Assembly (NCBI GenBank): GCA_002269645.1
Contig: NIVC01000140.1
Coordinates: 1-64,000 of the forward strand
Length of the DNA: 64,000 nt
Direction: 5' to 3'
Source: Macrostomum lignano
Taxonomy: Eukaryota
A program made the position numbers and the translations under genes. The notes under the pieces were generated by a model. That model ran no database searches. It had not been told where the DNA came from and worked only from the letters and a program-made list of their open reading frames with translations. Shown piece by piece: positions 4,229 through 54,500 of the stretch (the first letter of the stretch is position 1; every line of letters starts with the position of its first letter).

Positions 4229-15708
<11,480 letters not shown>

Positions 15709-27690: not shown

Positions 27691-29645
27691 TGCCGCGTTA
27701 GAATATGGTATTCTGCCTGCGAATTATCAGCTGAATTTGTATTACCTGAGTGAATATGAATCTCACTCACGCTAACAGAAAATCATGGCACTAAACATAA
27801 AGAAAACCACGTGGCTTTTTCGAGCCTCTAATAAACCATTTCGGTTGATGGCGGAGCTGCTCTGAATATTTTTAATACTAAATCTATGAATCTACTTTAA
27901 GTGTACTGTAACTCTGAATCCAGTGCCGAGAGAGCTTGCTAGTAGAGGAAACTCGAAGATAAATGACTAGTAGTGAGCTGATACTCTCATTTTCTCGTAG
28001 CTATGAATCGCAGTTTGTTACAGTTCGGTCATGGAGGCATAAATAAGCACTAGAATTTCGCAGCAAGTGTGGCTGCTTGGGAGCCGAGCCTGACGCACTC
28101 TGCCGCATGCTGAATCAATTTTGCCGCTAAATTCAAGCCGCTGGGAAACTTTGCTATTCGAAATTCTCATTGAATTTCAATGAGAGCTGCAGCGCTAGTG
28201 ATTGCTGCCAGACCTCGCGGCCTGCGCCTAGCGCGAGTGCAAATAAATGCAAACAAGAAGTGGCATTGAGGCCTGTGAAGGCACTGATATTCAAGCATAG
28301 TCTACAGATATGCTTGTGTACACACTCAATTTCCTAACGGTTTTGCTGTATTTTTGCTTTACTATTAGTCACTGACTTGCAGCAACTACTACAGCCCACC
28401 ATCAACTCGGATGATCCCATCCTATTGCAGAGTAGCAAAAGCAGTGGGAGTCTGTCATGCAGCAGGGCCTAGCAGATACGCAGGGTTTGCGTTAAATCTT
28501 AGCGTGGTTTTGAGATCATGCTCACTTTACCTTACCCAGACACCCAAACAGGTGCAATACAAATCTTAAGGCTACTTTTTGCCAAATGTGAGTACGCAAG
28601 TCCAAGTGGGACTGTAATTGTAAAAATCAAGCCAAGATTTTCCTGTGGTGAGAAGACATGAAGATGCATGCAATGTCTCTTACCGTCTGGCTTCCAATTC
28701 CTCGCTCCAGTGGCTTGGTGGCAGCGCGGCCTCCGCTGCTGCCTTTTAGCTCTGCTGGCCGGGGAGGAAGGAGAGAGGAGGTGCGCCGGGAGACCAATGA
28801 AAATGATTCCAGCCAGCAGATATCGCGAGAAAGCTGCAAGGGGCTTCAGTTGCAATTGCAAACTAAGCTGCTTGCTGTGTGAACTCGCAGACCCGCTACA
28901 ACCACTGCTACATCAGCGAGCTCCTTAGTGATGCATCTTTCGAGTTCATGTCTGTGATTTTACCTCCTCCTTGTGTAAGTGTCTGTCTATCTGGGACTCG
29001 CTCTCCGCAGTCCTCTCTTGACACCGGTCTTTGTCGTGCTGTACGTGAAATACTGTACGGACAATGTACGCACAAGTAATGCACACAAGTCTGTCTGTCT
29101 GCACCCCGCACCCCAGCAAGCAGAGGCCTGTCAAGCGGGACTTTGTGTCCCGTCCCCGCTACGGGGAGCAGGGGAATAAATAAAACAGTCTGGAGGCACG
29201 GCCTCTGCAAGCGCTGCGAACTATAAGATCGAGCTGCTGCATGCCTGCGAGGCTCACACACATGCACACGAAAATTATCTTTAGTCATTTGGAACCAGAC
29301 TCCACACCTTGGAGTGCTGACGATTGCTGGGTCTTCATTCGAATTTTCTAATGTACCCTCGTAGTATCACACGTTTATTATACCACAATGCCTCCCTAAC
29401 CAGAGAAGCACTAAAAGATAGTGTTAGTTGGCAATCTTTGCTGTAGATATGTGGAGGCTGGAAGCCGTATAGGTTCGTGTATGAAGCTTCGTTATCGGGG
29501 TGACTGCCGGGACTCAGTATATGACTAACAAACCGATGGATGCAGGCACGCATGTACTAGATAGAGATTCGAATTCGACCTCGCCCCTATCGGACTAATA
29601 AAGTGAATAGAAAGCTTAATATCAACATTTGAATATGATTGCAAT

Positions 29646-29703
29646 TTCTAACAACTTCAACGCGTTTCGCACGCCATGGTGCATCGTCAGGATTTTATTA
29701 GAA
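29646..29703 (-). ncRNA. Type I hammerhead ribozyme motif (minus-strand copy)
   Basis: Exact reverse complement of the plus-strand motif at 29777-29834. Confidence 0.7.
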
Positions 29704-29776
29704 CGATTTGAGAAATTGAGATTGATAATTGATAATTGATTTAATCAATCGCTTTCAATCTCAATTTCTCAAATCG

Positions 29777-29834
29777 TTCTAATAAAATCCTGACGATGCA
29801 CCATGGCGTGCGAAACGCGTTGAAGTTGTTAGAA
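29777..29834 (+). ncRNA. Type I minimal hammerhead ribozyme motif
   Basis: CUGACGA (29790-29796), extra U, helix II GCAC/GUGC with a 6-nt loop, GAAA (29812-29815), palindromic ACGCGU as helix III, GUU cleavage triplet. Helix I (29777-29789 with 29822-29834) pairs at 11 of 13 positions, including one G-U. Confidence 0.72.
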
Positions 29835-30682
29835 ATTGCAATCATATTCAAATGTTGATATTAAGCTTTCTATTTATTCTTCTCGCCAAGCGAGCGACTC
29901 TACCAGCAATAAAGTGAATGTGTAGGCAAGAGTGACCGATTAGCCTTGAGATTGTTTCTATCGAAATTCATACGCAATGCGCAATTCTCCCTGTACGAAT
30001 TTCGCATTAAGAGTATTTCGATCTCGAATATTTAAAAACACCTTTCTGAATAAGCGAACTTAAAACCCCACGAGTCCGAAACGCAGGACGAAGACCCACG
30101 GACTCTGCTTGGATAGCAAGCTAATATTTGCTTGCAAGGCAGTGCCCCGCCAACTCAAGCAGTAAAGCAGCGGTGCGCGTGTACTCGAGTCACGTGTCGG
30201 AAATAACCATACAGCTTGCAGCCTGAAGTTCGAAGTTCAGTCTAAGCTCAGAGAACGCGTTCACATGCTGAACTTCAAAACTAAAGCTGGGGAATCAAGA
30301 TTTGGCAAGATTATACATGCATACTGCCTTCTTTATGTTTACATTTGGGTAATCAGACTGCTTTTGATCGCAACTCCTCTGTACCGGAATTACCTCCTTT
30401 AGTTTTGCAGTCTGGCGGCCACCCGCTTCGCGCCTAAGAGCTGGAAACCGGACGGGAGATAAGAATCAGCTCTGATTGATAGCTTTGTGTCTGCCTTTCC
30501 GGCGGTTGTTTACCGCGGCTGCTGTTGCCAGGTGACTCCCAGTTTTTGCTTATATCGGTAGATACTTTTTAAGCATATTAAATCCAGTTACTCGTAGTGT
30601 AAGCAAGACACCCAGTCAAATATCAGATCGCATTATACAAATTTGCATGTATAGAGAGAGGCTTTTGAAAACTTGCGATGGA

Positions 30683-33692: not shown

Positions 33693-33735
33693 TAAAGAGC
33701 TGTGACTGCATGAGGTGCACATGAATACATGGTAG

Positions 33736-33949
33736 CAAAAGCAGTGGGAGGCTGTTATGCAGCCAGGCCTAGCAGACACGCAGTGTTACACGGGCACAAA
33801 CTCGAACAAAAGCAGTGGGAGGCTGTTCTGCAGCCAGGCCTAGCAGATACGCAGTGTTACACGGGCACAGACTCGAACAAAAGCAGTGGGAGGCTGTTCT
33901 GCAGCCAGGCCTAGCAGATACGCAGTGTTACACGGGCACAGACTCGAAC
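33736..33949. repeat. 71-bp tandem repeat, 3 copies, overlapping the formin stop codon
   Basis: Unit starts at 33736, 33807 and 33878. Confidence 0.9.
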
Positions 33950-36900: not shown

Positions 36901-39900
36901 CGAGCGTTGTCGGGCAGATCTGAGCTGAGAGAGCGGATGAGCTCCATGCCCGCCAGCAGCTGAACAACGTCCGCCTTAACATTGTCCAAGTTCACGGCAG
37001 CGGCCTTCTCCACGTACCTGCATATAGCAAAGAGAAAGCTGCTGGGTCAGCACAGGTGTTTAATAGCTAGCTATTCAAAGGTACAGGCTACTTAAGAGCT
37101 CCTCCTATAAGAGCTCACCTACGAAACGTTAACTTCTTTTCTAGACTTTTTCAAAAGAAGATAAAATGCTGGGAATGTCTAAATTGAATAGCCGGTGTTT
37201 AAACAGCAGCTTCACAGCTGCTGATGAAAAGTTACCTATCGAGCAAAATTCTTACTAACAATAAACTAAATTTGAACGTACGACTCGTATGTTCCACCAA
37301 AAGTTGAAAGCCGCTCTAGTCGCAGTTTAAAGGTAGGAAATGCAGACTAAAACCTAAATTATGCCTTTAGCAAGCGGCTTATAAAGTTCAAACAGCGCAC
37401 CTGAGGTCAGACTCAAAGGTGGCCACATCTGGGAACTGCTGGTCGATAAGGTCAACCAGGTAGTGCAGCAGCGTCCACTTCTTGTCCCCGGACTTGGTGT
37501 CGGGCAGCATGGACAGACTGGACAGTCGGAATCCATAGGCCACGCCCCGCTTGTGGCTGTTCAGGTAGTTGCCCAGCGTGAGCAGCAGCTCCAGCAGCCG
37601 CTTGAACTTGGCGGACTTCTCCAGGTTCATAGAGGCCGTAATGACGTAACGAAGCGGCGACTCCACGCCGTGCAGCACCTCTTCGAACTGCCCCATGTAA
37701 CGGAGAGCCTGCAGGCGGCGCTCCAGGCCTTCGACGCGGCAGAGGCGGATCAGCAGCTGGTCCAGCTCGTGCAGCTCGCTCACGCTCCGACCTTCAACGA
37801 ACTCGTACTGCCTGTAGGCCTGCAAAATCAACGGTGTATAACAGTGGTCAAAAAGTCAACATAAGTAGTGACCTACGACTATGTTGAGTAAACCTTTACT
37901 TGGCTTCTGCGCGCCAGACGAATTATAGACAAAATTACGAGCGACAATTCGGCTTTGCACTGGACTCACCTGCAGCTCCTCGGCAGTTGGCACGCCCTGC
38001 CTAAGCAGAATCTCGGCCAGCTCAGTGGGCACCGCGGCCGGATCCAAACTGTCCAAAGCGGCAACGAGGCGGTCGGGACTGAGACGAAGAGCATCGAGCT
38101 TGTGGCGCAGGATGGCGACGCTGCGCAGGCGGTCGTGGCTGAGGAGGGTCGGCTTGTCCTTCCGCATGCGGGCCAGTGGGTCGTCCGTGGAGTCTCCGTC
38201 GCCCCCGGTAGAGGCTGCAGAAGTGGCGGCAGCGGCGGCCAGCTTAAACTTTTCCTCGAAGTCGTCGCAGTCGAGGCCCTGGCGGACCCGGTCAGGCTGC
38301 ATGTCCATAAAGATGGTGCCGCGGCACTGGTTAGGGGGCAGCACCGTCCAGTTGAACAGGGGCAGGCGGTGTTTCGGAATCACCGCGTCCTTCAGGTTCA
38401 GCCCAGCTGGACCTCCCAGCGACACTGGTGGCGGTGGCGGCGGTGGGGGAGGAGGCACCCCAGCTGGCGGCGGGGGAGGCGGCGGAGGGGGCGGAGCCGG
38501 CGCTGGGACGGCGGGTGCAGCTGGTTGCGGGACAGGCAGTGATGGCACTGATGCAGCAGCAGCAGCAGCGGCAGTCGAGGCGTCTTTGGCAGCTTGCAGC
38601 TCCTCCTTTGTGCGGACGAGCTCGGCCTCCGAGTCACGCAGGCGGCGGCTCATCTCGTCCAGCAGGCGGTCCACCTCCGACTCGCGATCCGAAGCAGTCT
38701 GGCTGGCCTGCCGCAGGCTGTGCCGCATGCGGGCGAGAGCAGCATCCTTCTCCTGGCGCAGGCTGGAGCACTCGGCTTCGGAACGCTGCAGGCGCTGGCC
38801 CAGCTCGGCCATGCGGGCCACAGACTCGTCCTCCAAACGCCGGAGTCTGGCCTGCACAGAGTACAGCTCGTCCTCCAGACTCACCGCCCGGGACACCGCG
38901 GCCTGCTTGGCTAGAGAGTCGTGATACAGGCTCACAATGTCTATGGTGTTGTCAGCAATGGCCTCGAGCTGACTGTTGAGCCGGCAGTCTTCGTATTTGC
39001 CCTGCAGGCTGTGCAAAAAATCCTCCAGGCCCAGCTGGGCAAACTCAGCTTGGAGGAAGACCCGCAGACCCAGCTGCTCATTGTTGATGTTCTGTACAAC
39101 ATTGACGAACCTGGCACAGCTGATCATGAACTCAATGCTGTACTGCTCAGGCGGCAGACTGTCGTGATGCCTGAAGTAGGCCATGAGGGTCTCCCACCGC
39201 CTGGCCTCCCCGATCCGCTCCTTCAGGCAGTCGAAGGCCTCCAGCACCCTGGCGTGCATGCCATCAAGCATACAGAGCGCAGCCAGCAGCTCCAGCGCGA
39301 AAGTTTTGGTGCTATACCTGGGGTGCAGCAGACACTGAACGATGATGCTCACGGCGGCGCTGTCCTGGAAGGTCCGCTCGCAGGCGCGCTGGTTGTTGAA
39401 GAAGACCCGCATGCACTTGATGCCGTTGTGCAGGTCGCCCAGCAGAGCCTCGTCGCCTTCTCCTGCCCTGGACGGCGGCTGCCGCTGCCGCTTAGCCGAC
39501 CTCTTTGCGCTGCCGCCACCGGCCACCGGAGTGCCGGTGTTGCTGCTGGCGGTGGGACGGCGGCCCGACAAACTGCCGTTTGCCTGCTCCTCGGCGCTGC
39601 GTGGCCGGAATAATAATGAGCTCATCGGAATGTTGATAGCAATACTTGCCCAGCTACAGCTAATGCAGATCCAATGGGCAATCAACGTAAACGAGCTAAT
39701 TCAATTACTTCAATGCTAAGACCTCCAGCTCACCTTATGAGATCATCAAGCGTTTTGCCAAGGTACTCGATCAGCAGCTCCAGGCCTCCTTCTTCCAGGA
39801 ATTCTTCAAGCCATCTACGGTGAAAATGGAAAGGCTCGGACTAACGCTAAATTTATCATTTGCAGCCGGTTTAGCTTCAGCGTACTGACTGCACTTTATG

Positions 39901-40360: not shown

Positions 40361-42167
40361 TGCGGGGCTCCTGGTAGCTGCTGCTGCTGCTCAGGCGTGC
40401 TGCACTGACAAAATCAGCATGGGTGGCAGCAGCCTGCAGCACATGAATTGATTGCAAGTTGGTCAGCTTTGCTTTTTTACTTCATAATCTTTTTCAGTAT
40501 TTACTTGAAAACCAATGCTTGTTTAGGCTAAATAGCACACTGTGACCATATTTCAAGACAATTCATCATGGGCATATATGAAAATAAGACTATGTACGAA
40601 AATCTACTGCAAAAACAATATTAGTACAACCAGAAATTTGTTGTGAGGGGGGCAGATTCTGGAAGATAAATGCCACAATGGAAGGGGGCAAAGGGAATGG
40701 CTCTGAAGTTTGGCGAAAATGTCCTTTGATTTTTTCAGGTCTCCACCAAGGGGGGTGGCTGCTTGTTTGCCCCCCTTTAGTTGTACCACTAAAAACAAAA
40801 ACCTTTCTTAGAAAACTCACTTGCAAAGTTGATTGACTTTGTTCAATAAGTCTATAATAGCAGCCTGGACAGCTGCCCCAAGTTTGCAGAAGATATGCAC
40901 CCACAGGTTTTAGGGAATTGTTACCTTTTTTTGGCATACATTGGTGTATATTTAGCTAAGATGGGATTTGTGTTTAAGCATCTTATAGTATGATCTAATG
41001 CAGAATTTAAGCAGGAAAAGATACAAAAAATAGACGAATAGCATTTTGCTCTTTTTTGCACCACCACTTTACGTTTACCTACCTCTATGCATTGCCTTTC
41101 TAGCCTTGCCTCTAGGAGTGTCTTTAAAGACTCTGCCATCATCAACAACTTGTCTACATGAGGCATGATGCATGAGGTTACTATTTTTCATAAATTATGA
41201 TGCATTAGAATGCTTCCAACATGTATCATTGATATCATACATGCGCAACTTTGGGAATCACCCAGCCATTTCTATTGGCAACACACACACATGTAAGTCG
41301 CTATTGGACAGAATAGTATTTGAATAGAAATGGCCAAGTGAATCCCAAGGTGGCGCCCAAGCATGATTGATTTTGTACTGTTTTTCTAGCAGTTTGTCTA
41401 GTTTGTCTAGCAGTTCTTGCATTCTCTTGCAACTGGCAAGAGAATGCAAGAATGCAAGAGAATGCAAGACAAGAGAATGGGAAAAATCTAGCCCAACAAA
41501 CTATTAATTCTTTCTATTTTACTGTTATCATTTTAGCACTCTTTTCTCTGTTATATTTCAATTTTAGTACACCTAGGTCTAAGCTGATTTGATAGTCATA
41601 CTTTATAATAAAAGGTAGATATATGAAATGCATGTGACACTCAGATCTGGTTTATATATTATTGAAATACAAGTGGATTGATAGACTATCTCACAGTCAT
41701 GACAAAACCAGTTAGTCTGGTGTGTGTTTACTGTTAAACTGTTAAAAAAACAATATTCCTAGCTGCTAAAAAATAACAAAATTGCCCAAAAGGCCTAATT
41801 TAATACTAGCCAAAAAAAAACTAGACAATAATGGATACAATTTGGTAAAAAAGTTTATACTACAAAGTTAATATATAGAAAATTTGCAAAACAATGACAT
41901 ACTTCATACTATTATAACTTATATACAAGCTAAGATATATCCCCTTAAAGTTGACCATGCAATCAAAATTGATCAATTAATATTTAACCCTGAATTATAA
42001 CTTAAATAGCACAAGATGCTCAAAAGGCATCATTATATACACTCTGGTACTATCAAAATTTAGCCAAAAATGCAAAAAAATGGACACCTTTGTCACAAAA
42101 ATTGATTTAAGGACAAAAAATTACGAAACTTTATAGAAAAAATGCTGATTTTTAGACCAAAATGATC

Positions 42168-42351
42168 AAGGGAAAAGAGCAACTACCTACTCACCCTCCT
42201 GATTATACCATTAAATAAGCTAAGGCTAAGAGATTTTAGACTTACCATGCGCACAACTTTAAGGGAAAAGAGCAACTACCTACTCACCCTCCTGATTATA
42301 CCATTAAATAAGCTAAGGCTAAGAGATTTTAGACTTACCATGGGCACAACC
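42168..42351. repeat. 93-bp tandem duplication (2 copies)
   Basis: aagggaaaagagcaactacc...cttaccatg begins at 42168 and 42261. Confidence 0.9.
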
Positions 42352-44539
42352 TAGCATACTAATGCATTTTGGCTAGTATGCACTATATCTAGTGCATAAT
42401 CAAAAAAATATTGGCTAACTTCTAATATATTTATAGTATGATAACTATATATGTAACAACCAAAGTATATTGGTAAAGGCCTAATAAAATAATTGTTTTT
42501 AGAATTGAATATAGTATCCCTATAAATAAGAAACATATCAATTGCACTTAGGCCCCTATATATCCATTTGAATAATTATACTAATATTAGATTAGGCCTA
42601 ACTAGGCCTATGGCTATACTAAGTCATTTTCTCTACTTTTTAGATAGAGCCAACTTGTCTACAAATTGACAAGCTGGCAGCAAATGAAGTAGGCCTAACT
42701 GAAATCTGATCCTGAGTATGGGAATAGGCCTAAGTTAGGCCTATCTAAAAAATTAGGCCTAGAAACCTAAATTTTATCTAGGATTCTTGAATAATATGTG
42801 TAATGTGTAATAAAATACTTACTATGGACTAGTTGATCAATAATAATATTATATCTCTGATAGCCAATAGAAATTAGATTTTATAGGGAATAGGCTCTCA
42901 ATTTTTCTCTATTTTACATTGCTTAAATTAAATCAATTTAGCCTTATTTAGGACTAAAATAATGACTGAATTTATCAATGAACTCTCCATTAAAGCTACT
43001 TGAAGGATCACTTACAACTACTTCTTTAGGCCCATTGTTGCTGGATTCTTCCTAAATGCCCAAAAATAAAAATTAGTCCTAAGCAAATAGGCCTAATTTA
43101 ACATAATTGGCAAAAGTTGTTGAGTATGATGCGGCAAATGAACAACAAAACAACACAAAACAAAACAACAAAAGCATGCATGCATATATTTAAATGATTG
43201 AAATTACCGACTGAAATTACTGAAAATTATTTGTGATATTGTCTATCAGTTGACGGATACTGATAGCGTTAACCGTTAATTATGGACATGGCAATCATAG
43301 ACAGTATGACGAGGCAACCGCCGAGCGGTCGAAGCGGTGCAGGATGATGATTCATACATCTTGGAAACCAATACACGAATTTAAACTAGCAAAAAAATAA
43401 AAACAAACCTTAGTTCTTTGTACATACTGTATTCATGATTTGTAGTATCGATTAAAGTATCATTTTAGTTGTAAAGCAAAAAATATTTTTACAGCGTATT
43501 GATGAATTGATTTATTTGTATTCCATCCATCCACTTACACTAAATTCGTTGTATTGTGTTATTGACAAACTTATCATACCTTGTTGCAATTAATTGGGTT
43601 GAGCCAAACTGCAAAACCTTTCGTTCTCAAGGAAAACTGAAGTTACTAATTTATTCTAATTTAACATGACCTTGGTAAATTGACTTATCACTTATCAGAG
43701 ATGACAATTCAAGCGACCGTTTAAACACGGATACATTTATATAAATCTGCGTGGATTTTTAGAGAGCACTTTATGTTTGGAAAACTCCCCACCGTCGATG
43801 AAACAGAACTTTATTGAATTTTGTGTTGGGAAAACAACTGCGAAATCAACAGGAATCAATTGTTGCATGCTTTCCAGCTGTGACCTGTGCTAGCCCATAT
43901 ACTGTGCACACTCAGCGAGGTGATCTCACCTAATGCTAGAAATTCAGACGCTGTGCAATAATCTACTTGAAGTATTCTGTCCTGTTTAATTTCCTGTCTT
44001 TTCGCGGCAGTGGCAGAAATTCCGCGGCGTTAATGACTGATGAAACATACGAGCTAGATATATAGCGACTTTCAAGACATTCGTTGAAAATAGATACGAG
44101 CTAACAATCGAAAGCGCCTTTGCGCCCCGCACGAAACAAAGTTACCGATCACAGCTCGCGTCCTGCGCAATTTCCAGCACTTTAATTCGGCGCAAGCGCA
44201 TGCAACCGGTACACGTGGTCAGGTACCTGCTGGCCGAGTTGTCCACGCAGCTGTCAGTGTTTCAGAGTTACTAGGCGTACGCGAACGCGGTCTCGCTTCA
44301 CTTCAGAGCCCTCGGTCGGCCAGACATGTGTGAACCACCGATGGTCAAGCTGTTCGTGGTATTCGCCGATGTCTCAACTGGCAGCAGCGCTCTTATTAGA
44401 GCCGCAGATCTCAAGCTGCAACCAAAAATCGAAGTGACATCGCGTTCTGTGCAGTTCTCGCAGCCTGGCGGAGTATGCTGCGGAAAGCGAAGGTGACGAC
44501 AAGCAAAATTAAGAACGTGAGCGCTAGCATTTTATATGC

Positions 44540-44579
44540 GACATGTTTCGCCTCGCGTCTGGCATCGTCAGGTTCTTAA
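44540..44579 (-). ncRNA. Hammerhead ribozyme core (minus-strand copy, family 2)
   Basis: Reverse complement reads ttaagaac CUGACGA U GCC agacgcga GGC GAAA CAUG UC, identical to the plus copy. Helix I is non-canonical. Confidence 0.55.
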
Positions 44580-44621
44580 AATTGAGTTACGATTTTTTCG
44601 TTTATTACTTATTTTCTAAAT

Positions 44622-47417
44622 GGCCCCCGATCAAAAAAAGTTGGCTTAATTATGTCTTAAAGATGTCTTGCATAAGACAGAAAGATGTCTTCAAGACATC
44701 TTACAATTGACTTAATTCGGTCTAAAAATTGGCTCCTTGCAACACTTGTAGACAACTTAGAGATAACTTAAAGACGTCTTCAGACATCTTCAAGACATCT
44801 TAAAATCTACTTAAAGACATCTTCCAGATGACTTGCAGAAGACGTCTTGCCCAAGATCATTTAAGAAATGCTGTTTCCATTGCAATCACAGTTGTTTAAA
44901 AGAAAAATGACTAAAAATATTACAGCACTCTTTTGTTTCGTTTCAGGCAATATTGATATGAAAGAGAAGCTATTTAGTAGGCTTCTAAACATGGTTCAAT
45001 GTAATTTATTATTTATGATTTATATTTTCATTTTATAAAAGGCACAGTTTAAAAGTCACAGAAGCAATAAAATGGTGAATCAAAAACAAGTTAAAATACA
45101 CTAAATAAAAATGCAAAAATACTCAAGTCACAAGTGCAAGTGTATAATTTTATAATGCATCATACCCAGTCATTGCATGGAAATACTTGGTTAATGCAAT
45201 AATGACTAAGTTGCTCATTGCTTGGTGGAAAACTTGCTGTAAATTGATCCTTTGCTAGCCAACTACTAGTTTAGAATTGGCTCAATCCAGGAAGATTCAA
45301 GATCCAGGTTAGCTTCCACTATGATGGATAGCATGTGTTGATAAGGCTGAAAAGGATAAGTTTAATAAAGGTTATAGTTTATAGGTTGTTAGGCTGAAAT
45401 AATTTGAAATTCATAAGTAAAAACAATAAATAATAAATAATAGATTATTTTACTAATATACTTTAAAAATCTAATAAATAAATTGCCTAGGCCCCTACTA
45501 TATATTCACACAAGTGTATTATACAATAACTTTGCCTTAGGCTTAAATACATAGGCTAAAGCTTAGGGCCTAATCTCAAAGCAAAATAAAAAGATTAGAA
45601 TATCAATTTTATATAAAACTTCTAGGCATACCAACTCTATTTATTCTCTATTAGGCCTAATCCAATTTTTGAATGTGATATAGGCCTAATAATAAATTAT
45701 AAGGCTATATCTATTTCTTATTTAAATTTTCATTGGCCTAGCCAAGAAAAAAGCACTAATGACTAGGCCTAATATTCAAAATATTGATATATTGAAAACA
45801 TCATATATATGCCATTAGCCAATAATAAAGGCAAAGAGGAAGCAACATATAAAGGCCTATAGGCCAAGGTTTTCTTTTTTGCCAGAGACAAGGTACAAAA
45901 GTGCATTCTATACTCATTTTTATAGTGCAATTTTAAGGCTCAAAGTGCAATTTTTTATTTTTCTTATTTTAGGGCAATGCAAATGAGGCTTCAAGTTTAA
46001 CAGAAAAACAGGTTATAAGACTGTCCCTAAATTGCAATTTTCAATTTCTGGGTGCAATTTTAAATTAAAAGTGCATATACACACTCTACATATAAAAAAA
46101 TAAACCTAGCTATAGGCTCATGGAAATTATTTATTACTTTTGACATAAAAATCAAAACAAAAACTATTTAGGCCTAAGGAAGAAGCTAGGGCCTATCTAA
46201 GGCTAAGAGGCCTACAACAGAACAAAATAGCCTAATAAGCCAATTCAACAACTATAAAACTTTGACTTTAAAAAGCCAGAAGTAAATAAAACATATATTT
46301 TTAGTTTTAGGCCTAGTACATGGGCCTCTAGTTAATGCCTGAATCTTTTAAGGCCTAACTTAAAATGTAAACATGACTATGCATTAGTTAACTAGTGCTT
46401 ACTAGTGCTAGGCATAGCAATAGATATGCAGTAGGCCTAACTAAAAAAACATTGCATCCAAGGTCCAATTTAAAATAGTAATTTTTAAGTCAGGATGTTA
46501 CATAGCATCCCTATTGCCTATTGCATAAAAACATTTCTGGCCAATCTGGGTTTTTTGCTGGCACCTGGCACTAGAATATGAAATACAATCCTAGAAGCTT
46601 CCAAGGAAGAATTAGTAAAAAATACTACTAAGAAGGTCTAATTTGAGGATAGTAGATGTATCATCACGAATAGTAATACACTATCGCATTAAGTAAAGAT
46701 AAATCTAGGGTAGGGCTTACACCAGAAATCTATATAGGCTATAGCAGCCAATTAAAAATTGAAACTTATCACAAAAGATAGAAGCAAGTGTTCGACAATT
46801 AGGCGGCCTTCGCGGTCACGAGGTTGTCTTTTAGTCCTTTTTAAAAATGTCGTTCCGCCATATTGATTTTAGCTAATTTTAACAAAAGCATCACCGATAT
46901 ATATTGCAACTTTGTCTTTTTTAATGCTTAGCTGTTTAGAATTTTGTAAATATATTGGCTCCAATCAAAACTGTTGTAGTTAAACTTTGTCTCAAAGTTT
47001 GTAACGACTCAATACAAAAAATTGCATATAATTGCACTCCAAAAGCGTAAAGGATTTTTAATAATAGGCACACCTTCCACAGAGTACAATACAACAAAAT
47101 TTTTAGATAAATGTCACAATAGTTGCTTGTTTTATTTTTTATTGATTTTTACGATCTGGATAAATTTGTATCTAAAACTTCCTACTTACAGTAGAAACAG
47201 TTGTTTATGTAAATTTTTAGTCTTTAAGGTGATGTCTTAAAGATGTCTTCAACAAGACATCTCATAAAAGTCAATTTCAAGTCATCTTCAAGACAACTTT
47301 ATCAAGATAGCTTGTGGAAGCAAAGTGGAAGATATCTTTAAATTGTCTTGAGGTGTCTTTAGCCATCTTAAGACAATTCTAAGACGTCTTAAGACAACTT
47401 CTTTTTGATCGGGGGCC
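44622..47417. mobile_element. 2.8-kb non-coding TIR element nested in the hammerhead palindrome
   Basis: 16-bp perfect TIR ggcccccgatcaaaaa; clustered subterminal aagayrtctt palindromes at both ends; AT-rich interior with no long ORF; no clear TSD. Confidence 0.75.
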
Positions 47418-47489
47418 GGTATTTATAAGTAACTAAATTGTGTAAATTGCTAAATATAAGTAAATAAGCAAATAGATCGCAACTAAATA

Positions 47490-47529
47490 TTAAGAACCTG
47501 ACGATGCCAGACGCGAGGCGAAACATGTC
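47490..47529 (+). ncRNA. Hammerhead ribozyme core (plus-strand copy, family 2)
   Basis: CUGACGA 47498-47504, extra U, helix II GCC/GGC, GAAA 47520-47523, palindromic ACAUGU helix III, GUC triplet ending at 47529. The helix I partner gttcttaa lies 26 nt downstream (47556-47563). Confidence 0.55.
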
Positions 47530-48521
47530 GCATAACAAAAAATGATAGCGCTTACGTTCTTAATTTTGCTTTTCATCAGATGCGCAACTTTACCAAAGGT
47601 GACGACACGATTGGAGCGGCTCTATCTGAAGGGCGACCTTGCAGCAGCAAGCATCGTCTTGTCGGAGTGCGACTGTGAGCTCACCGTGCGGCATTCAAAG
47701 ACCAACCAGTTCGGCGACCGAGTTCAGCGAGTGTTTCTTCCGAAAGTGCTTGATGGAAAGTTAAGTGTTCTGTGCCCATTCCTTTAAGTGTTCATGCGAT
47801 AGCTACCGACAAAACAAATCGACCAGGCACCGCGCTTGGTTCACCTCCACATGGTCGGCCGGAGGATGGTTGCCTCTGGCGGCCAGCGGTTTCGCTCGCT
47901 GTGCACTTTGGCAGGTTTTTGCGTTCACTGGTCACTGGCTGCAGCTGGGTGGCTTTTATGAACTGCATAAAATGCAGTCATATTTGCGAAGGACGGCTGC
48001 AGCTAAAACTTGCTGCGTAATTTGCATTTGTTCTATGTAGCTTACAAGAACTTTCGTTCCCACGCGCCTGTTCTGCAGTGTTTTAAATAAAGGAAAGACA
48101 GTGTAGGCACTGTCTTCACGTTTCTCTCGCCCGCATCTGCGGGCCTAAAGGCACGGCCATTGCCTCGGCTGGGCTGTAGACCGCAGCAGCCTGGGCCCAG
48201 AAATACCGTGCTTCGAGTTCAATTCTTTGTTATCCGACGTGAGCAGAAGGTTGCAGGCAGGACGCAAAATCCATACCTGCTACTGGGGCTTGAGCCTTCG
48301 TCTAGCTTCGTCTCAATCGTTTAAACCAGCTTATAAATGAGACTAAGGAAAAACTAGGCTTCCAAAAAAGTTGAATGGCAAAAATATATAAAACTTCGCA
48401 AGAATTGCCTTTCAGATAAGAATTTATTACTGATTCTACCTGAGCTAACAACAAAAACTGGGCTAGTCGAAGTAATTATTGTCAGTAATTTTACTTTTCA
48501 AGTACTTTGTACTTAAATCAT

Positions 48522-51500
48522 TCAGTCGGTAGCCAACAACGTGGAAGTAAAGAACTGCTGCAGGATGTGGGGCAGGCTGGCGTTGTCTAAGCAGACAAAA
48601 GCGTGGCCGCTAGGCAGGCTCTCTCGCAAAAAGGTCGCCTGATTGCCGAGGGTACCCAAAAAGATCGCGCAGGCGGTGACCCTGGCGTCCTGGGTGAGGG
48701 CCCGGGACAGCTGCTTGGGATGAATGCCGTACCGGTCCAGGTTTGCGTCTGAGAAGACCACGAGAAAGCGCTCGTCCGCCTCGGCCGTGGCAAGCTGCCG
48801 CACACCGCAGTCGATGGCTTCTACTGTATGGTCGCCACTCATGCAGAACTGAGAGTGGGCCAGCATGGCCTTCAGAGCATCCAGCCTCTGTTTCTGATTG
48901 GCTGGCGGCCGAACTGCGCTGGTGAAGTTCCAGTCGGGACCCTCGCCACTGTGGCCGCGGAACTCGTAGGCAAATTTTGTCTCGAAGCCTTCGAAGGCCT
49001 CCATGAGCATCAGGCAGGCTTCCAGCTGTCGCTCAAGACGCTGGTCGGTGCCATTGAAGCGGTACATCGAGCCCGACACGTCTACCAGCACCCGCAGCAG
49101 CTTCGGCTTCTCTGGAGGCGTCCCGAGCTCCGGCGGCCGCTCGCCTCGGCGCCGGTAGACCGCACGCTCGCCGACCAGCCCCTCTACCAGCTTGCCGTCG
49201 TCTAGATCACCCTGCGTCTAAATGGATTCAGAAAATTCAGCTAGTAGTGCGCACTTGCATAAAGGTGCTGCTACGTCAGGGCTTTACTTTGCCAGTGGTC
49301 TTAGACAGATCACGGGGCAAGGCTGTGTGGGGCTGAGCTTGTCTTACACCATTGCCTACCGGGCTGCTGCTGCCTTTGTGGCATACCATCTATTTGGTCT
49401 GTCCGTCAGTCTGACAGTCCAATGGTACTTTAACACGAAAAAGAGATTTCTAGTGGTAAAAATATGCGGAACTGTAAGTTATTCCTTACGAATAACGAAT
49501 AAATCGTTGTACAATAATCATTGCTCGTGAACATAAGAATTTAACAAGACGCGGTGTGTCGGTGTTCTCAAACAAGGGAAAACTGTCTTTTCGGGTGAAT
49601 TTTATTACGAAGGGGGATCAAAAGTTTTCTGAAACCTACTCTTCTGTAGTAAAAAATTGTAACTGCCAAGCAAATCAGGACATAAAAAAATTCAAGAGGC
49701 CAAAGCTCACCTGATGCCGCAGCCAGTCCCGCTCCTTCCCTTTGGCTTCCAGTGACTGCAGCATCGCCCTCAGTGAGGACACCTGCGGCCGCACTCGGCG
49801 CAGGTAGGTGTCGTACAGCTCGCCGTCGTGCTCGGACATCTCGATCTCGCGCAGCCGTTCCCGCCACGCCTTGCGGGCCATCTCGCGTGCGGCCTCCGAA
49901 ATCTGCAACGAGTTTTGACCGACATATAAGACACAGGAGCACAGAAATTGCAGCTCACCGACACGCGACACCCCTCAGATCAGCTCACCTCAGGTGGCAC
50001 GGCCCGCTTAATCTCGTCGGGCACCTGATACACGTGGTGGCCCGCATCCAGCCGGTACGGCCCGCCAACTCCTCCCAGACCAGCCGTGTCGCGGCCACCG
50101 GTGCCACCGGCCCACATATTGCCGCCCACGTGCGGCGCCCCGGTGGGGTCCACTTTGCCTTGCTTCGGCCCCGACAGGCTGCTGGAGCCCGGCGGCAGCT
50201 GCCGCTCGATCAGCATCTGACGCGATCCGCCACCGAGCGCCGATTTTTCATCGCCAAGCAACCGGCGCCACTCGGCCAGCGCCGTCTCCAGGCCCGCCGG
50301 CGCTACCTGCCAGAAGCAGACGGAGCCGGACTGATCAGCGGAGACGAGGTCGCCACCAGCAGTCTGCGCCAGCAGCCGCGGCAGGTCGGACACCAACCAG
50401 GAGGCGGGCCGGCCGGCCAGCCGGTGCACAGCCGGTCCTGGCGGCTCCACCGGCAGGTAGCTGACGGTGCTGGCCGCCAGGTCTGTCAGTTCCAAGACGC
50501 CGGCCGTGCCGATGGCCGGCTGCCGGTTGCCGAACGCTTCCGGTGGCACCTGGTCAGTGGGGCGGCAGCGCACGAGGCTGCGGCCATCGGGCAGGAGGCA
50601 GAACTGGCTGAACCGAGGGTCTGCAAGCCCGCCAGATCCAGAGCCAAACATCGGATCGCGAGTTCGTGCCTGGCGGGAGGCGGCGGGCAGTGGGCGTGAG
50701 ACGTCATGCAGCTGATTAAGACTCAAAAGGACTCATTGTGCTGGCCTCATTTTGTGCTAGCCCCATACTGTGCTAGCCCTATACTGTACTAGTCCCATAC
50801 TGTGCTAGTCCCATACTGTGCTAGCCCCATACTGTGCTAGCCCCATACTGTGCTAGTCCCATACTATGCTAGCCCCATACCGTGCTAGTCCCATACTGTG
50901 CTAGTCCCATACTGTGCTAGCCCCATACCGTGCTAGCCCCATACTGTGCTAGCCCCATACTGTGCTAGCCCCATACTGTGCTAGCCCCATACTGTGCTAG
51001 TCCCATACTGTGCTAGCCCCATACTGTGCCAGCCCACGAGTTCAGAAGACATTAAAAGTTTAAGCTAGCAAACTAGCAAGTCAGGAAAAGATTGTTCAGC
51101 ACTTCTGCGAAGCCCACCTGCGCCGCAGCAGCAGCGGGAGGTTTATGAGTGAGCGAGTCGATCCGGTGCAGGCTCAGCTGGTGAAGACCCTCTGCATTTG
51201 GCGGCGCCAGGCTCAGCACCGACAAGTGGCCGCCGCCGGCTGCCGACACGGCTGACAACTGCGTCTCCGGCTGGACTCGAAGCGACGGCAAGTCCGTCGA
51301 CAGCGGGCAGGCCCACTGGATCTTCTGCGGCAGCAGCTCCGGCTGCTCCAGCTGCAGCAGGCTGAACTGATGAAGCTCCTGCGGCGACTGCAGCAGAATG
51401 TGCTGGCTGCAAGCAGAAATTTGCTGGCTGTAACCTTGGAATGTGCTGGCCGCAACTATGGAATGTGCTGGCTGAAACTATGAAATGTGCTGACTGCAAC

Positions 51501-54500
51501 TATGGAATGTGCTGACTGCAACTATGGAATGTGCTGGCTGAAACTACGGAATGTGTTGACTGCAACTATGGAATGTGCTGGCTGAAACTATGGAATGTGC
51601 TGGCTGAAACTATGGAATGTGCTGGCTGCAACTATGGAATGTGCTGGCTGCAACTATGGAATGTGCTGGCTGCAACTATGGAATGTGTTGGCTGAAACTC
51701 TGGAATGTGCTGGCTGCAACTATGGAATGTGCTGACTGCAACTATGGAATGTGCTGACTACAACTATGGAATGTGCCGGCTGCAATAGAGAATATGCTGG
51801 CATTATAAAAAGAAAGTAGAAATCCCTCCAACCGCTGCAAAAAACATATTGCTCAGAGGCGACGCAACCAACCTGTCATTGTTGACAAACTGCACGATCC
51901 AGGAGGTCTCGGACAGCGGCTGCAGGTTGCTGATAGGCGCCGGAAGCTGCAGACTGAGAGACCAGCCGCCCCTCAGGTCCAGCAGCTCAACGTGGTCTCT
52001 GAAAGCAAACGAAGACTTGTACTGGTAAGTTGCAAATCAAATTGAAGAGTTTCTTTCGTGGCCGCACCTTCCTTGCTGGAACATCACGGGACTGCCGTCC
52101 AGCCCCAGCGAATCTGCCAGGCGAAAGGAGCTGCCCTTGGCGAGCGTCGGCCATCGCCATAGGTTCCTGCCGCTAGCCAAGGGGTGCTCCGGCAGGCCCT
52201 GCGACTTCACCCGGGACACCTGGCGTTTACCTGCGTCCACTAGAAGAAGCACATTGGTCTGCGGAATGAAAGTTGGGTGCTCAGTTCTGGGGCGAAAGCA
52301 TTGGTCGGAGTGACAGCTGGGTGCTCAGTTCTGGTGAAGGGCATGGGTCTGCAGAGCGATGGCTGGGTGCTCAGTTCTGGTGAAGGGCATGGGTCTGCAA
52401 AGCAATGGCTGGGTGCTCAGTTCTGGTGAAGGGCATGGGTCTGCAGAGCGATGGCTGGGTGCTCAGCTCTGGGGACGGGGACGGCAATGTGATGAAATGA
52501 GTGAGCATGAGCAGGCTTCAGAAAGCTGCAAACCCGTGCTGCAATGAACGCAGTCGCACCATTTCCTCGTGCAGCAGGAAGCAGTGCGGCATGGTTTTCT
52601 CCAGGGACAGCAGGTGCACCCGTGGCTTGTAGAAGTGGCCAGTGTCGGGAAAAATCTCCGTGAAGTCCAACACCTTGGCGGTCCTGGATCCTGGGACCAT
52701 CGAGTAGACCCGCACGGGGTTGATCGTGGCCAGGTGGACCAGCCTGTGGCTGCCATCGTCAGCTGAGAATGGGATCGATTGGCAGTGTGCTGCACATCAC
52801 CGAGATCACATATAGCACACCCATGCGGCAGTTGTCACTCATACCCATAGATGCTCACAGATAGCACTCAGTACCACAGAGGCCAATACAGGAGGGGGGT
52901 GGCATCACTAAGCTCATGCAGAGACGCACAGTAAGTAGCTCAGCAGTAAGGCTCTGACTCTCGCGCCAAAGTGCATTGGTTTGAACTTCGTTCGACCACC
53001 TTTAATTTGGGCTTGCTCAGGGAAATTGACCTGAAGCTTCGCCCATGAAGGCCGACCCCAAGGCAGTGTGTGTACATTCCGGACGATGAAAAGTCGCTGT
53101 ACATCCTACATTTGTGTGCCGGAGTACGCACCCGTGTGCGCAAGCGATCTCTAACAGAATGTGCACAACTACTTGCTTCCCCGCTGGCTCGAATGTCGCC
53201 TTGATTTGCGGCAGTGCGCAGCCCTGTAAACTAACAAAGCAACTAAGCTGGTTCAGATATCACTAATGCAGCAGATGACATCATGCATACAGCAGGACTG
53301 CGATGTCGTGTCGCTCATACTCACAGCAGGTGACACAAATGTCAGCCAGTCCGTCAGTATCATCGAGCGGAATGCAGGCAAAGGACTCGAGCTCGCTGAA
53401 GTGCTCACTGCGACCAGAGCCGCCGTCTAGCCTGATTGAGCTGACTGGCAGGTCGGCGGGCCCCTTGAGGTGAAACTGGCTCTGTGCCGCCGTCAGGAAG
53501 GGGCTGAACCGATTGGCCGGGAGCAGGTTGCTGCTGCCGAGCAGCACAGGACTGGGCAGCGGTAATCTGCAACCGATGCAGTGGGCTGCATGACTCAGAC
53601 AGGTCGCAAGGTAATGTTTACTGTCTGGCAATGCTCCGGTCGCTTGCATATGAGCACTACTCATACAAATACAGCTTACTGCATTGTTAGACTTGATTTC
53701 AAATACAACTGTAAAATTCAGCTTTTGCATCTTGCCGGAGTGAAACTATTGGCACTTTCTAGCTCGTACGCTCGTATTTTGATTTGGGTCACTCTAATTG
53801 CAGTTTCGTGAGCTCCGAATCGTTTACCTGCACAAACTGCTCACTCAACGATGGAAAACGGACAAGAACAAATCAATACAGAATTCGACACAAAGACTTG
53901 CACGATAATGAAAGCAGCTGTCCTTCAAGCGAGAGTCGCAGTGACAGCAAATAACAGCTCAAGTATATTTGCAGCACCTCGCTGATATTACAGAAAATTT
54001 AGCAAATTTTCAATGCCGATAAAAATCGATTTAAATGACGCATAACAAAGGTCACAGCAATGTCAGCCGCGCCCTCAAATAAATTTATGACTCTCGGAGG
54101 AAGGACAGCAGCCAATGGTGTCACATGCAATGATCGCAGGAGCAGAGATAGCGGAGAAATCAGAAGTTAACGGGAATCTTACTGCTTGCTCAGCTTCACA
54201 TTGTGGTGACCGACCGACTCGGCAGGAATGCCGTGCTTGGTGAGCACATCCGCCAGGGTGGACCGCAGCTCCGGGTTGTGCGAGTCGAAGTCAAACACGT
54301 TCTGCAGCACCGAAGAGAGGCGCTCGCCAGGGAACTTCTGCAAGTTGGAGCGAATCAGGGAAAGTCAGAGATACTGGATGGCGGAGCGCCCGAGAGTGAA
54401 TCGGTATGACCGGTAGTGAATGGGTACCAGAGTGAATGGGTTGACCCGGAAGTGAATGGGTACCAGAGTGAATGGGTTGACCCGGAAGTGAATGGGGCGT

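What the first reader, a model, noticed from the sequence alone, without database searches (positions are those of the whole stretch)
44490..47607. Second, sequence-distinct dual-hammerhead palindrome with the same architecture and a true 12-bp TSD
Removing the nested 2.8-kb element leaves 298 bp, against 299 bp for family 1. The layout is the same: 12-bp repeat, arm with minus-strand core, arm with plus-strand core, short tail, 12-bp repeat. The arms share little with family 1 beyond the ribozyme core (CUGACGA-U, GAAA, palindromic helix III, here ACAUGU with GUC). Two independent families within 18 kb suggest a recurrent, probably abundant class of small ribozyme-bearing palindromic retroelements. 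I cannot tell from the sequence whether such a class has been described.
Basis: partly seen in the sequence, partly recalled or inferred. Interest (0 to 1): 0.8.

Follow-up and report, generated by a model that had tools for sequence, protein, structure and literature searches.

The report
Inverted Penelope-type hammerhead repeat insertion
This is a roughly 300-bp insertion made of two mirror-image copies of the leader of a Penelope-like retrotransposon, each with a minimal hammerhead ribozyme motif, later split by a DNA transposon; the layout is the known footprint of that retrotransposon class, not a new kind of element.

Summary
Taking out a 2,796-bp TIR element (44622-47417) leaves a 298-bp unit. 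It consists of an exact 12-bp TSD, a 120-nt antisense arm, a 33-nt centre, a 120-nt sense arm, a 25-nt one-sided tail and the TSD again. Each arm carries CUGACGA-U-helix II-GAAA-ACAUGU-C. A min-hammerhead descriptor finds only the four arms of families 1 and 2 in the window, and nothing in 200 shuffles.

A head-to-head inverted 5'-truncated copy, a one-sided tail, a short TSD and a hammerhead in the pseudo-LTR are together the published signature of Penelope-like element (PLE) insertions. Dual opposite-strand min-hammerheads 100-700 bp apart were already reported in Schistosoma.

The two families are also related beyond the core. Their last 54-56 nt start with ATG and encode similar 18-residue peptides that end at the tail end. 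This fits the PLE layout, where pLTR plus tail hold the first ORF codons.

The family 2 hammerhead is non-canonical. 26 nt separate the cut site from the helix I 3' strand, so cleavage after 47529 is doubtful.

The host is a Macrostomum-like flatworm. Copy number and length distribution could not be tested. Verdict: two new members of a known kind, of modest interest.

The parts
44490..44501 (.). Left copy of the 12-bp target-site duplication AAGGTGACGACA (family 2)
   Evidence: Exact 12/12 match with 47596-47607; flanking bases differ on both sides
44502..44621 (-). Family 2 left arm: antisense copy of the PLE leader/pLTR. It has no tail and starts at RT start 'site 1'.
   Evidence: Inverted repeat with 47451-47570, 87-88% identity
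44540..44571 (-). Minus-strand min-hammerhead core (CUGACGA-U-GCC/GGC helix II-GAAA-ACAUGU-C17)
   Evidence: Descriptor hit; identical to the plus-strand core
44622..47417 (.). Nested non-autonomous DNA transposon, 2,796 bp. It has a 16-bp perfect TIR GGCCCCCGATCAAAAA, 11-bp subterminal repeats and no ORF of 90 aa or more. No clear TSD; possibly 4-bp GGCC.
47418..47450 (+). 33-nt central segment. It is AT-rich, partly a direct repeat of the start of the right arm, and partly pairs with the end of the left arm.
   Evidence: Read from the sequence; fold of the spliced element
47451..47570 (+). Family 2 right arm: sense copy of the PLE leader/pLTR
47488..47497 (+). Helix I 5' strand (UAUUAAGAAC), directly upstream of C3
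   Evidence: 9 contiguous pairs with 47556-47564
47498..47529 (+). Plus-strand min-hammerhead core. Nominal cleavage site is after C47529.
47530..47555 (+). 26-nt insert between C17 and the helix I 3' strand. It holds a small hairpin (GCAU/AUGA; GCAU/AUGC in the left arm), the AGCGCU palindrome and the ATG.
   Evidence: Read from the sequence; absent in family 1
47556..47565 (+). Displaced helix I 3' strand (GUUCUUAAUU); lies inside codons 5-8 of the short ORF
47542..47595 (+). First 18 codons of a presumed PLE ORF (MIALTFLILLFIRCATLP), ending exactly at the tail end
   Evidence: BLOSUM62 score 45 and 9/18 identity to the family 1 peptide; P<5e-5 (nt shuffle), 1.5e-4 (aa shuffle)
47571..47595 (+). 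One-sided 25-nt 'tail' (RT start 'site 2'), present only on the sense arm
   Evidence: Not part of the inverted repeat; matches the PLE tail described in PMC3846280, PMC8557442 and PMC11167929
47596..47607 (.). Right copy of the 12-bp TSD
29597..29919 (.). Family 1 element used for comparison. TSD AATAAAGTGAAT (29597-29608 and 29908-29919); arms 29609-29741(-) and 29743-29871(+); cores 29659-29690(-) and 29790-29821(+); canonical helix I 29776-29789/29822-29834; ORF start 29852-29907 (MLILSFLFILLAKRATLPA); tail 29872-29907.

Best explanation
The element is the product of one Penelope-like element (PLE) retrotransposition event in a Macrostomum-like flatworm genome. It consists of two head-to-head copies of the 5' leader/pseudo-LTR of a PLE transcript. 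Each copy carries the PLE-type minimal type I hammerhead and the first codons of the PLE ORF.

Shown by the sequence:
- An exact 12-bp TSD.
- Two inverted arms whose RNA 5' ends meet at the centre.
- A hammerhead motif in each arm.
- A 25-nt tail on one outer end only.
- An ATG-initiated 18-codon frame that runs to the tail end and is homologous to that of family 1.
- A later nested insertion of a TIR DNA transposon at the centre.

Inferred mechanism, by analogy with the Anolis PLE studied in vitro:
1. A PLE RT/GIY-YIG protein nicked both target strands 12 bp apart.
2. Each 3'-OH primed reverse transcription at one of two adjacent internal sites just inside the ORF start. Site 1 gives the tail-less arm and site 2 the arm with the tail.
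3. [quoted passage not shown]
4. The two cDNAs were joined head to head. Self-priming or snap-back of one cDNA is the alternative route to the inverted arm.

The hammerhead would act, if at all, as a dimer through its palindromic helix III (ACAUGU) in PLE transcripts. It was not cleaved in the template that was copied.

The copy itself is most likely a dead-end, non-coding by-product. Less likely, it is a short non-autonomous PLE derivative.
For: Anatomy:
- Layout, arms, tail and TSD.

Hammerhead features listed for PLE min-HHRs in PMC4209133, all present in both families:
- Conserved core.
- G10.1-C11.1 pair.
- Palindromic 15.2-16.2 (CAUG / CGCG).
- H17.
- The third helix II pair changes compensatorily between families (A-U to C-G).
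- 0 descriptor hits in 200 shuffles.

PLE insertion signature in the literature:
- Inverted 5'-truncated copy plus a 30-40 bp one-sided tail (PMC8557442).
- ORF flanked by pLTRs with an adjacent inverted pLTR, 8-10 bp TSDs and a 31-bp tail. The pLTR holds the first 12 aa and, with the tail, 22 aa. Palindromes occur at the inverted junction, and the arrangement is mostly head to head (PMC3846280).
- Both DNA strands are cleaved and extended, RT starts at two internal sites whose interval is the tail, and unprocessed RNA is the template (PMC11167929).

ORF start:
- Homologous 18-aa peptides end at the tail end in F1 and F2. 5 of the 9 conserved residues use different synonymous codons. P<=1.5e-4.

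Target site:
- Target DNA next to the tail-less arm resembles the reverse complement of the tail start. F2 10/15, p about 8e-4; F1 9/16, p about 8e-3. This fits priming on, or endonuclease preference for, tail-like sequence.

Host:
- The host is a flatworm (84% identity to Macrostomum lignano formins). Flatworms are known to carry PLEs with min-HHRs.
Against: - No PLE RT or GIY-YIG ORF was found among the window ORFs scanned. The only RT belongs to an APE-type LINE. The autonomous partner is therefore inferred, not seen.
- No other copy of either family could be retrieved.
- No Rfam hammerhead model matches, even at E<=10 on 170-nt stretches.
- The tail of F2 is 25 nt, shorter than the 30-40 nt usually quoted.
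- The F2 hammerhead has 26 nt between C17 and its helix I strand.
- The F2 arms differ at 19 events yet share a 44-nt difference-free block over the ribozyme (P about 0.002 under a uniform model; about 0.1 by rough estimate if the low-complexity part is excluded). Plain neutral decay of two initially identical arms does not obviously explain this.
- The 18-aa similarity could partly reflect a conserved cis-acting RNA site rather than coding constraint. Codon-position differences are 10/4/9, counted by hand from the codon table, and are not significant on their own.
Confidence: 0.8

Rival explanations
1. Dedicated non-autonomous palindromic retroelement. The ~300-bp dual-hammerhead palindrome is itself a master unit. 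It is transcribed, perhaps from an internal pLTR promoter, and copied as a whole by PLE enzymes, forming an abundant fixed-length family analogous to SINEs or retrozymes.
For: - Two sequence-distinct families have almost the same total length (298 vs 299 bp), the same 12-bp TSD and the same part order.
- The F2 arms diverged by about 12% while the ribozyme block stayed identical. This is expected if both arms evolved under selection in a propagating lineage.
- Leader lengths from centre to ATG are similar (110 vs 124 nt).
- Non-autonomous pLTR-derived elements (retrozymes) are known.
Against: - Only one copy of each family is available.
- The equal totals come from unequal parts (133+129+36 vs 120+33+120+25).
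- The F1 arms are 100% identical, as expected if the inverted arm is made anew at each insertion.
- A perfect hairpin RNA (z about -23 to -30) would be a poor RT template and a Dicer substrate.
- In other species the inverted copies vary in size (PMC2377424), and opposite-strand HHR pairs lie 100-700 bp apart (PMC4209133).
Confidence: 0.15
2. Metazoan non-LTR retrozyme: a small tandem-repeat element with type I hammerheads that propagates through self-cleaved circular RNAs.
For: - Size range 150-450 bp, type I HHR, low GC and TSDs longer than 4 bp fit in general (PMC7229834).
- Retrozymes are pLTR derivatives of PLEs (bioRxiv 10.64898/2026.07.22.740005).
Against: - The two copies are inverted, not tandem.
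- The arms are not circular permutations bounded by cleavage sites. The template was copied through an uncleaved hammerhead.
- The helix III here is loop-less, i.e. the PLE min-HHR type rather than the canonical retrozyme HHR.
Confidence: 0.04
3. MITE or foldback DNA transposon (or a chance or assembly palindrome) that happens to contain hammerhead-like words.
For: Palindromic structure with a TSD. The window holds other TIR elements, including the nested 2.8-kb one.
Against: - The inverted repeat does not reach the right terminus, because of the 25/36-nt one-sided tail.
- A 12-bp TSD is atypical for DNA transposons.
- The full min-HHR descriptor has zero hits in 200 shuffles.
- The ORF start is conserved between the families.
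- An exact TSD argues against an assembly artefact.
Confidence: 0.01

Closest known systems
PLE insertions with an inverted pseudo-LTR and a one-sided tail (e.g. Pen2a_Av of Adineta vaga; the 'form C' Penelope copies of Drosophila virilis; Naiad, Neptune, Poseidon)
   Same: - Head-to-head inverted 5'-truncated copy.
- Palindrome at the inverted junction.
- Tail of about 30 bp on one outer end only.
- Short TSD.
- pLTR plus tail contain the first codons of the ORF.
- HHR in the pLTR.

   Different: - Here nothing lies between the two inverted pLTR-like arms: no ORF and no direct pLTR.
- The TSD is 12 bp in both cases, against 8-10 bp reported in A. vaga.
- The F2 tail is 25 nt.
- The autonomous partner was not seen.
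PLE minimal hammerheads (min-HHR; Cervera and De la Pena 2014), including dual opposite-strand motifs in Schistosoma mansoni
   Same: - Type I topology.
[quoted passage not shown]
- G10.1-C11.1 pair.
- Short palindromic helix III without a loop, implying action as a dimer.
- Pairs on opposite strands about 100-700 bp apart in a flatworm genome.

   Different: - Helix II is only 3-4 bp here, against 7-8 bp in S. mansoni.
- Helix III is a 6-nt palindrome, as in the fly, rotifer and shrimp variants.
- F2 has its helix I 3' strand displaced by 26 nt.
- Core-to-core spacing is 97 and 128 nt, at or just below the low end of the reported range.
Anolis carolinensis Poseidon (PAc) in vitro mechanism (Frangieh et al. 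2024)
   Same: - The two outer ends correspond to two RT start sites just inside the ORF start, and their interval is the tail.
- Both target strands serve as primers, which explains the inverted copies.
- The template is uncleaved RNA.

   Different: - In PAc the ORF starts at stem II and RT starts 111-118 nt into the ORF. Here the ATG lies 12-30 nt after the cut site, and the ends lie 20-29 and 54-56 nt into the frame.
- PAc priming was reported as non-homologous to the target. Here the target next to the tail-less arm is partly complementary to the tail.
Metazoan non-LTR retrozymes and Schistosoma Sm-alpha SINE-like elements
   Same: Small non-coding HHR-bearing retroelements that depend on, or derive from, PLE pLTRs.
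   Different: Those are direct tandem or solo units with canonical type I HHRs and circular RNA intermediates. This one is an inverted pair with a loop-less helix III.
L1 'twin priming' inversions (from my own knowledge, not checked here)
   Same: An inverted 5'-truncated structure generated when both nicked target strands prime reverse transcription.
   Different: L1 twin priming uses one RNA and yields inversion/deletion junctions, not near-perfect palindromes with a tail.

Membership tests
Hammerhead ribozyme, PLE min-HHR variant (type I) | Catalytic core C3-U4-G5-A6-N7-G8-A9 ... G12-A13-A14 | tested here: met
   CUGACGA ... GAAA in both arms of F2 and F1
Hammerhead ribozyme, PLE min-HHR variant (type I) | [quoted passage not shown] | tested here: met
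   U, then GCC/GGC (F2, 3 bp) or GCAC/GUGC (F1, 4 bp). The third pair covaries, A-U to C-G. Feature list from PMC4209133.
Hammerhead ribozyme, PLE min-HHR variant (type I) | A15.1 / U16.1 flanking a palindromic 15.2-16.2 segment, followed by H17 | tested here: met
   A-CAUG-U-C (F2) and A-CGCG-U-U (F1)
Hammerhead ribozyme, PLE min-HHR variant (type I) | Helix I formed by the strand directly 5' of C3 and the strand directly 3' of position 17 | tested here: not met
   - F2: only G1.1-C2.1 can pair locally. The 9-bp partner GUUCUUAAU starts 26 nt after C17.
- F1 meets the feature: 2 bp, a 2x2 internal loop, then 9 bp.
- F2 is therefore hammerhead-like, but I do not file it as a canonical active HHR.
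Hammerhead ribozyme, PLE min-HHR variant (type I) | Match to a curated Rfam hammerhead covariance model | tested here: not met
   No hammerhead family hit at gathering score or at E<=10, whether on the whole window or on 170-nt stretches. This is the outcome I would expect for a helix III without a loop.
Hammerhead ribozyme, PLE min-HHR variant (type I) | Self-cleavage at the predicted site | not testable with these tools
   Needs in vitro transcription of monomer and dimer constructs, or 5'-OH / 2',3'-cP end mapping
Penelope-like element (autonomous) | Single ORF with a telomerase-like RT and a GIY-YIG endonuclease | tested here: not met
   The element holds only 18 codons. No PLE RT/EN was found among the window ORFs scanned; the only RT is an APE-type LINE at 9.2-14.6 kb. 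It is therefore a PLE-derived insertion, not an autonomous PLE.
PLE insertion footprint (pLTR structures) | Head-to-head inverted 5'-truncated copy forming inverted repeats | tested here: met
   definition in PMC8557442 and PMC3846280
PLE insertion footprint (pLTR structures) | Extension ('tail') of about 30-40 bp at one end only | tested here: met
   25 nt (F2) and 36 nt (F1), on the sense arm only. The F2 tail is somewhat short.
PLE insertion footprint (pLTR structures) | Short target-site duplication | tested here: met
   Exact 12 bp in both families. 8-10 bp were reported in A. vaga.
PLE insertion footprint (pLTR structures) | pLTR plus tail include the first codons of the element's ORF | tested here: inconclusive
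   An ATG-initiated 18-codon frame ends at the tail end and is conserved between F1 and F2. The downstream ORF of a full-length element was not available to confirm it.
Metazoan non-LTR retrozyme | Direct tandem repeats of 150-450 bp, each with a type I HHR | tested here: not met
   The copies are inverted; no tandem repeat was found at these sites
MITE / foldback DNA transposon | Terminal inverted repeats reaching both termini, next to the TSD | tested here: not met
   The right terminus is a non-palindromic tail

The most novel reading that the evidence does not exclude
The ~300-bp head-to-head leader pairs could be a discrete, fixed-length product class rather than random truncations. PLE RT would start at its two internal sites on unit-length mRNAs and run off at the transcription start on both nicked strands. 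Every event would then deposit a divergent pair of internal promoters plus dimer-competent hammerheads. Target choice or priming would be guided by complementarity between the target and the element's own tail RNA. Such units could themselves be transcribed and re-mobilised as a SINE-like palindromic family.
Probability: 0.15. Interest if true: 0.55.

Novelty: new member of a known kind. Interest (0 to 1): 0.3.

Why it matters
This gives two clean, TSD-bounded examples of PLE integration products in a macrostomid flatworm, one of them apparently very young. Such examples are useful because the PLE integration mechanism is still poorly understood. Four details bear on it:
- Both outer ends fall at homologous places in the first 18 codons of the presumed ORF.
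- Both events made exactly 12-bp TSDs.
- The target next to the tail-less arm is partly complementary to the tail.
- One family has moved its helix I strand into the coding region.

Each of these can be tested against the in vitro model of internal initiation. The finding does not reveal a new class of element or ribozyme.

Tried and rejected
- **Rfam:** whole window at gathering score and at E<=10, plus two 170-nt stretches. No hammerhead hit; only weak miRNA and snoRNA false positives caused by the palindrome.
- **Metagenome scan:** CTGACGATGCN{8,12}GCGAAAC gave 120 loci. All were chance matches or unrelated, with no similarity to F1/F2.
- **Further copies in the window:** none found by blastn.
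- **Host genome lookup via the formin ORF:** not on record.
- **Empty-site check:** I guessed that the interrupted host sequence is a tyrosine-recombinase-like pseudogene. There was no Pfam hit and no homologue, so I dropped the guess. No paralogous empty site exists in the window.
- **Thermodynamic folding:** monomers and homodimers do not give the hammerhead fold as MFE, so this was uninformative.
- **TSD of the nested transposon:** none convincing; 4-bp GGCC is possible only if the TIR starts at CCC.
- **Minus-strand CUGAUGA word inside the F2 tail:** no helix II or GAAA follows it, so I treat it as chance.
- **Full Pfam scan of all 178 ORFs of 90 aa or more:** prepared but not run. Only 20 ORFs were scanned.
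Full report
**1. What is in the sequence**

- The 12-mer AAGGTGACGACA occurs at 44490-44501 and 47596-47607. The bases next to it differ on both sides, so the duplication is exactly 12 bp.
- Inside lie a 120-nt arm (44502-44621) and a 2,796-bp insert (44622-47417).
- The insert has 16-bp perfect termini GGCCCCCGATCAAAAA, about 48-bp imperfect TIRs, arrays of 11-bp subterminal repeats and no ORF of 90 aa or more.
- Then follow a 33-nt centre (47418-47450), a 120-nt arm (47451-47570) that is the inverted copy of the first arm (87-88% identity), and a 25-nt tail (47571-47595) with no inverted partner.
- Without the insert the unit is 298 bp.

Family 1 (29609-29907, 299 bp, TSD AATAAAGTGAAT) has the same order of parts, 100% identical arms and a 36-nt tail. 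As single strands both units fold into long hairpins far beyond shuffled controls (z = -22.8 and -29.6).

**2. The hammerhead motifs are more than chance**

A bare CUGANGA...GAAA search gives 11 hits in the window. I therefore used a stricter descriptor. It asks for the core, an optional nucleotide after A9, a G10.1-C11.1-closed helix II of at least 3 bp, GAAA, A-palindrome-U and H17.
- This descriptor hits only the four arms of F1 and F2.
- It hits nothing in 200 dinucleotide-preserving shuffles.
- A relaxed version, and the U3-A8 core variant, add no further hits.

The features match those listed for PLE hammerheads in PMC4209133:
- a G10.1-C11.1 pair;
- a palindromic 15.2-16.2 segment (CAUG in F2, CGCG in F1);
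- one helix II pair that changes compensatorily between the families (A-U to C-G).

No Rfam hammerhead model matches at any threshold. I attribute this to the loop-less helix III.

**3. A caveat on family 2**

In F1 the strand right after the cut site (G29822 onward) pairs with the strand right before C3: 2 bp, a 2x2 internal loop, then 9 bp. That is a canonical type I helix I.

In F2 only G47530-C47497 can pair locally. The real partner of UAUUAAGAAC (47488-47497) is GUUCUUAAU at 47556-47564, which starts 26 nt after C17. The intervening 26 nt hold a small hairpin and the palindrome AGCGCU. Both F2 arms share this arrangement, so it was present in the source RNA.

The predicted cut after 47529 is the correct nominal position. 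Whether this RNA cleaves is doubtful. Even canonical PLE hammerheads cleave poorly and only as dimers or with protein help.

**4. The two families are related beyond the core**

Local DNA alignment finds only 20 nt in common. The last 54-56 nt tell a different story.
- In both families this stretch begins with ATG (29852; 47542).
- It translates to MLILSFLFILLAKRATLP(A) in F1 and MIALTFLILLFIRCATLP in F2.
- 9 of 18 residues are identical, most replacements are conservative, and 5 of the 9 conserved residues use different synonymous codons.
- The frame ends at the end of the tail in both (exactly in F2; 2 nt past codon 18 in F1).
- The score exceeds all 20,000 nucleotide shuffles and all but 3 of 20,000 amino-acid shuffles. 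It is also the best of 429 frame/offset pairings.

This matches the known PLE layout. In A. vaga Pen2a the pLTR holds the first 12 codons of the ORF, and 22 with the tail. [quoted passage not shown]

The outer ends of the arms are therefore best read as these two RT start sites. Site 1 lies 20 nt (F1) or 29 nt (F2) after the A of the ATG, and both arms end in ...CU. Site 2 lies at 54-56 nt.

**5. What it is**

The literature describes this architecture as the hallmark of PLE insertions:
- partial tandems forming pLTRs, an inverted 5'-truncated copy at the 5' side, and a 30-40 bp tail at one end (PMC8557442);
- TSDs of 8-10 bp, palindromes at the inverted junction, and a mostly head-to-head orientation (PMC3846280);
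- inverted repeats whose size varies from copy to copy in D. virilis (PMC2377424);
- hammerheads in the pLTRs, with dual min-HHRs about 100-700 bp apart on opposite strands in Schistosoma mansoni, interpreted as truncated PLEs (PMC4209133).

The host here is also a flatworm. The formin exon at 37856-39685(-) is 84% identical to Macrostomum lignano proteins.

I conclude that F2, like F1, is a PLE-derived insertion made only of two head-to-head leader/pLTR copies. It is not an autonomous PLE. It holds only 18 codons, and no PLE RT/EN was seen among the window ORFs scanned; the only RT belongs to an APE-type LINE. It is not a retrozyme, because the copies are inverted rather than tandem. It is not a MITE, because one terminus is a non-palindromic tail.

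**6. How it most likely arose**

Shown by the sequence:
- a 12-bp staggered target duplication;
- two arms with RNA 5' ends at the centre and ORF-start ends outward;
- a tail on one side only;
- an uncleaved hammerhead copied in both arms.

Inferred from the Anolis in vitro work:
1. The PLE protein nicks and extends both strands.
2. One strand starts at site 1 and the other at site 2.
3. [quoted passage not shown]
4. Self-priming at a junction palindrome is the alternative route to the inverted arm. The near-symmetric centres are compatible with it. F1 has a 3-nt loop with a 9- vs 5-nt asymmetry. F2 has a 33-nt AT-rich segment that is partly a direct repeat of the start of the right arm.

One further observation bears on priming. 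The target DNA that abuts the tail-less arm resembles the reverse complement of the first nucleotides of the tail.
- F2: 10/15, empirical p about 8e-4.
- F1: 9/16, p about 8e-3.
- At the a-priori length of 12 nt the p values are 0.016 and 0.019, which I combined by hand (Fisher) to about 0.003.

This fits either annealing of the nicked target to the tail RNA or the reported need of the Penelope endonuclease for tail-like DNA. With two cases it is only a lead.

**7. Age and later history**

The F1 arms are identical, so F1 is young. The F2 arms differ at 19 events and the element was later hit by the 2.8-kb TIR element, so F2 is older.

The differences in F2 spare a 44-nt block that covers helix I 5' strand, core, helix II, helix III and cut site. 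Under a uniform model P is about 0.002. By my rough estimate it is about 0.1 if the poorly alignable AT-rich part is left out. This could mean that the two arms came from two different template RNAs, or that the palindrome evolved as a unit. It could also be chance plus uneven mutability. I leave it open.

**8. What could not be tested**

- No other copy is in the window.
- My metagenome pattern scan returned only chance matches.
- The genome is not in the contig collection.
- The 298/299-bp equality is made of unequal parts. Similar leader lengths (110 and 124 nt from centre to ATG) would fit a defined template 5' end, but n = 2.

Published data from other species point to variable sizes.

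**9. Verdict**

This is a new member of a known kind: a PLE head-to-head pLTR pair with min-hammerheads. Interest is modest. Three details are worth following up: the conserved ORF start at the RT start sites, the target-tail complementarity, and the displaced helix I in family 2.

Noticed in passing
window 29852-29907 and 47542-47595: Both families end in an ATG-initiated 18-codon frame that encodes similar hydrophobic peptides (MLILSFLFILLAKRATLP / MIALTFLILLFIRCATLP) and stops at the tail end. It is presumably the N-terminus of the PLE ORF.
   Followed up: partly
window 44487-44501 vs 47571-47585; 29593-29608 vs 29872-29887: The target DNA next to the tail-less arm is partly identical to the reverse complement of the start of the tail: 10/15 (F2) and 9/16 (F1), with empirical p of about 1e-3 to 1e-2. 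Possible explanations are primer-template annealing or an endonuclease preference for tail-like DNA.
   Followed up: partly
window 47530-47565 (and 44506-44539 on the minus strand): The family 2 hammerhead has its helix I 3' strand displaced by 26 nt into the short ORF. The inserted stretch includes a mini-hairpin that overlaps the ATG and a second 6-nt palindrome, AGCGCU.
   Followed up: partly
window 44622-47417: 2,796-bp non-autonomous TIR element with 16-bp perfect termini GGCCCCCGATCAAAAA, 11-bp AAGACATCTT-like subterminal repeats and many internal TAGGCCTA words. It sits at the centre of the palindrome. No convincing TSD and no other copy in the window.
   Followed up: partly
window ~9200-14600 (+): Non-LTR retrotransposon with an APE endonuclease (10725-11492), RT (12581-13231) and RNase H (13423-14577), interrupted by frame changes.
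   Followed up: partly
window 37856-39685 (-) and 58348-59319 (-): Host gene exons: a formin (GBD/FH3/FH2, 84% identical to Macrostomum lignano proteins) and an AAA_5 (dynein/midasin-type) ATPase fragment.
   Followed up: partly
window 21058-23054, 24382-25346, 30679-31798, 33343-33949, 34879-36622, 50735-51801, 54393-56426, 58042-58318, 59456-61148: The window is packed with minisatellite arrays: 11-nt x126, 63-nt x18, 30-nt x58, 20-nt x45, 29-nt x61 and others. These arrays produce the long overlapping 'ORFs' and the Pfam 'Decapeptide' hit.
   Followed up: no
window 41403-41472: A short GCAAGAGAAT-repeat hairpin gives weak false-positive mir-19 and WLE3 Rfam hits.
   Followed up: no
window 42168-42350: A 93-bp unit repeated twice at 98% identity in the AT-rich stretch upstream of the family 2 insertion.
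   Followed up: no
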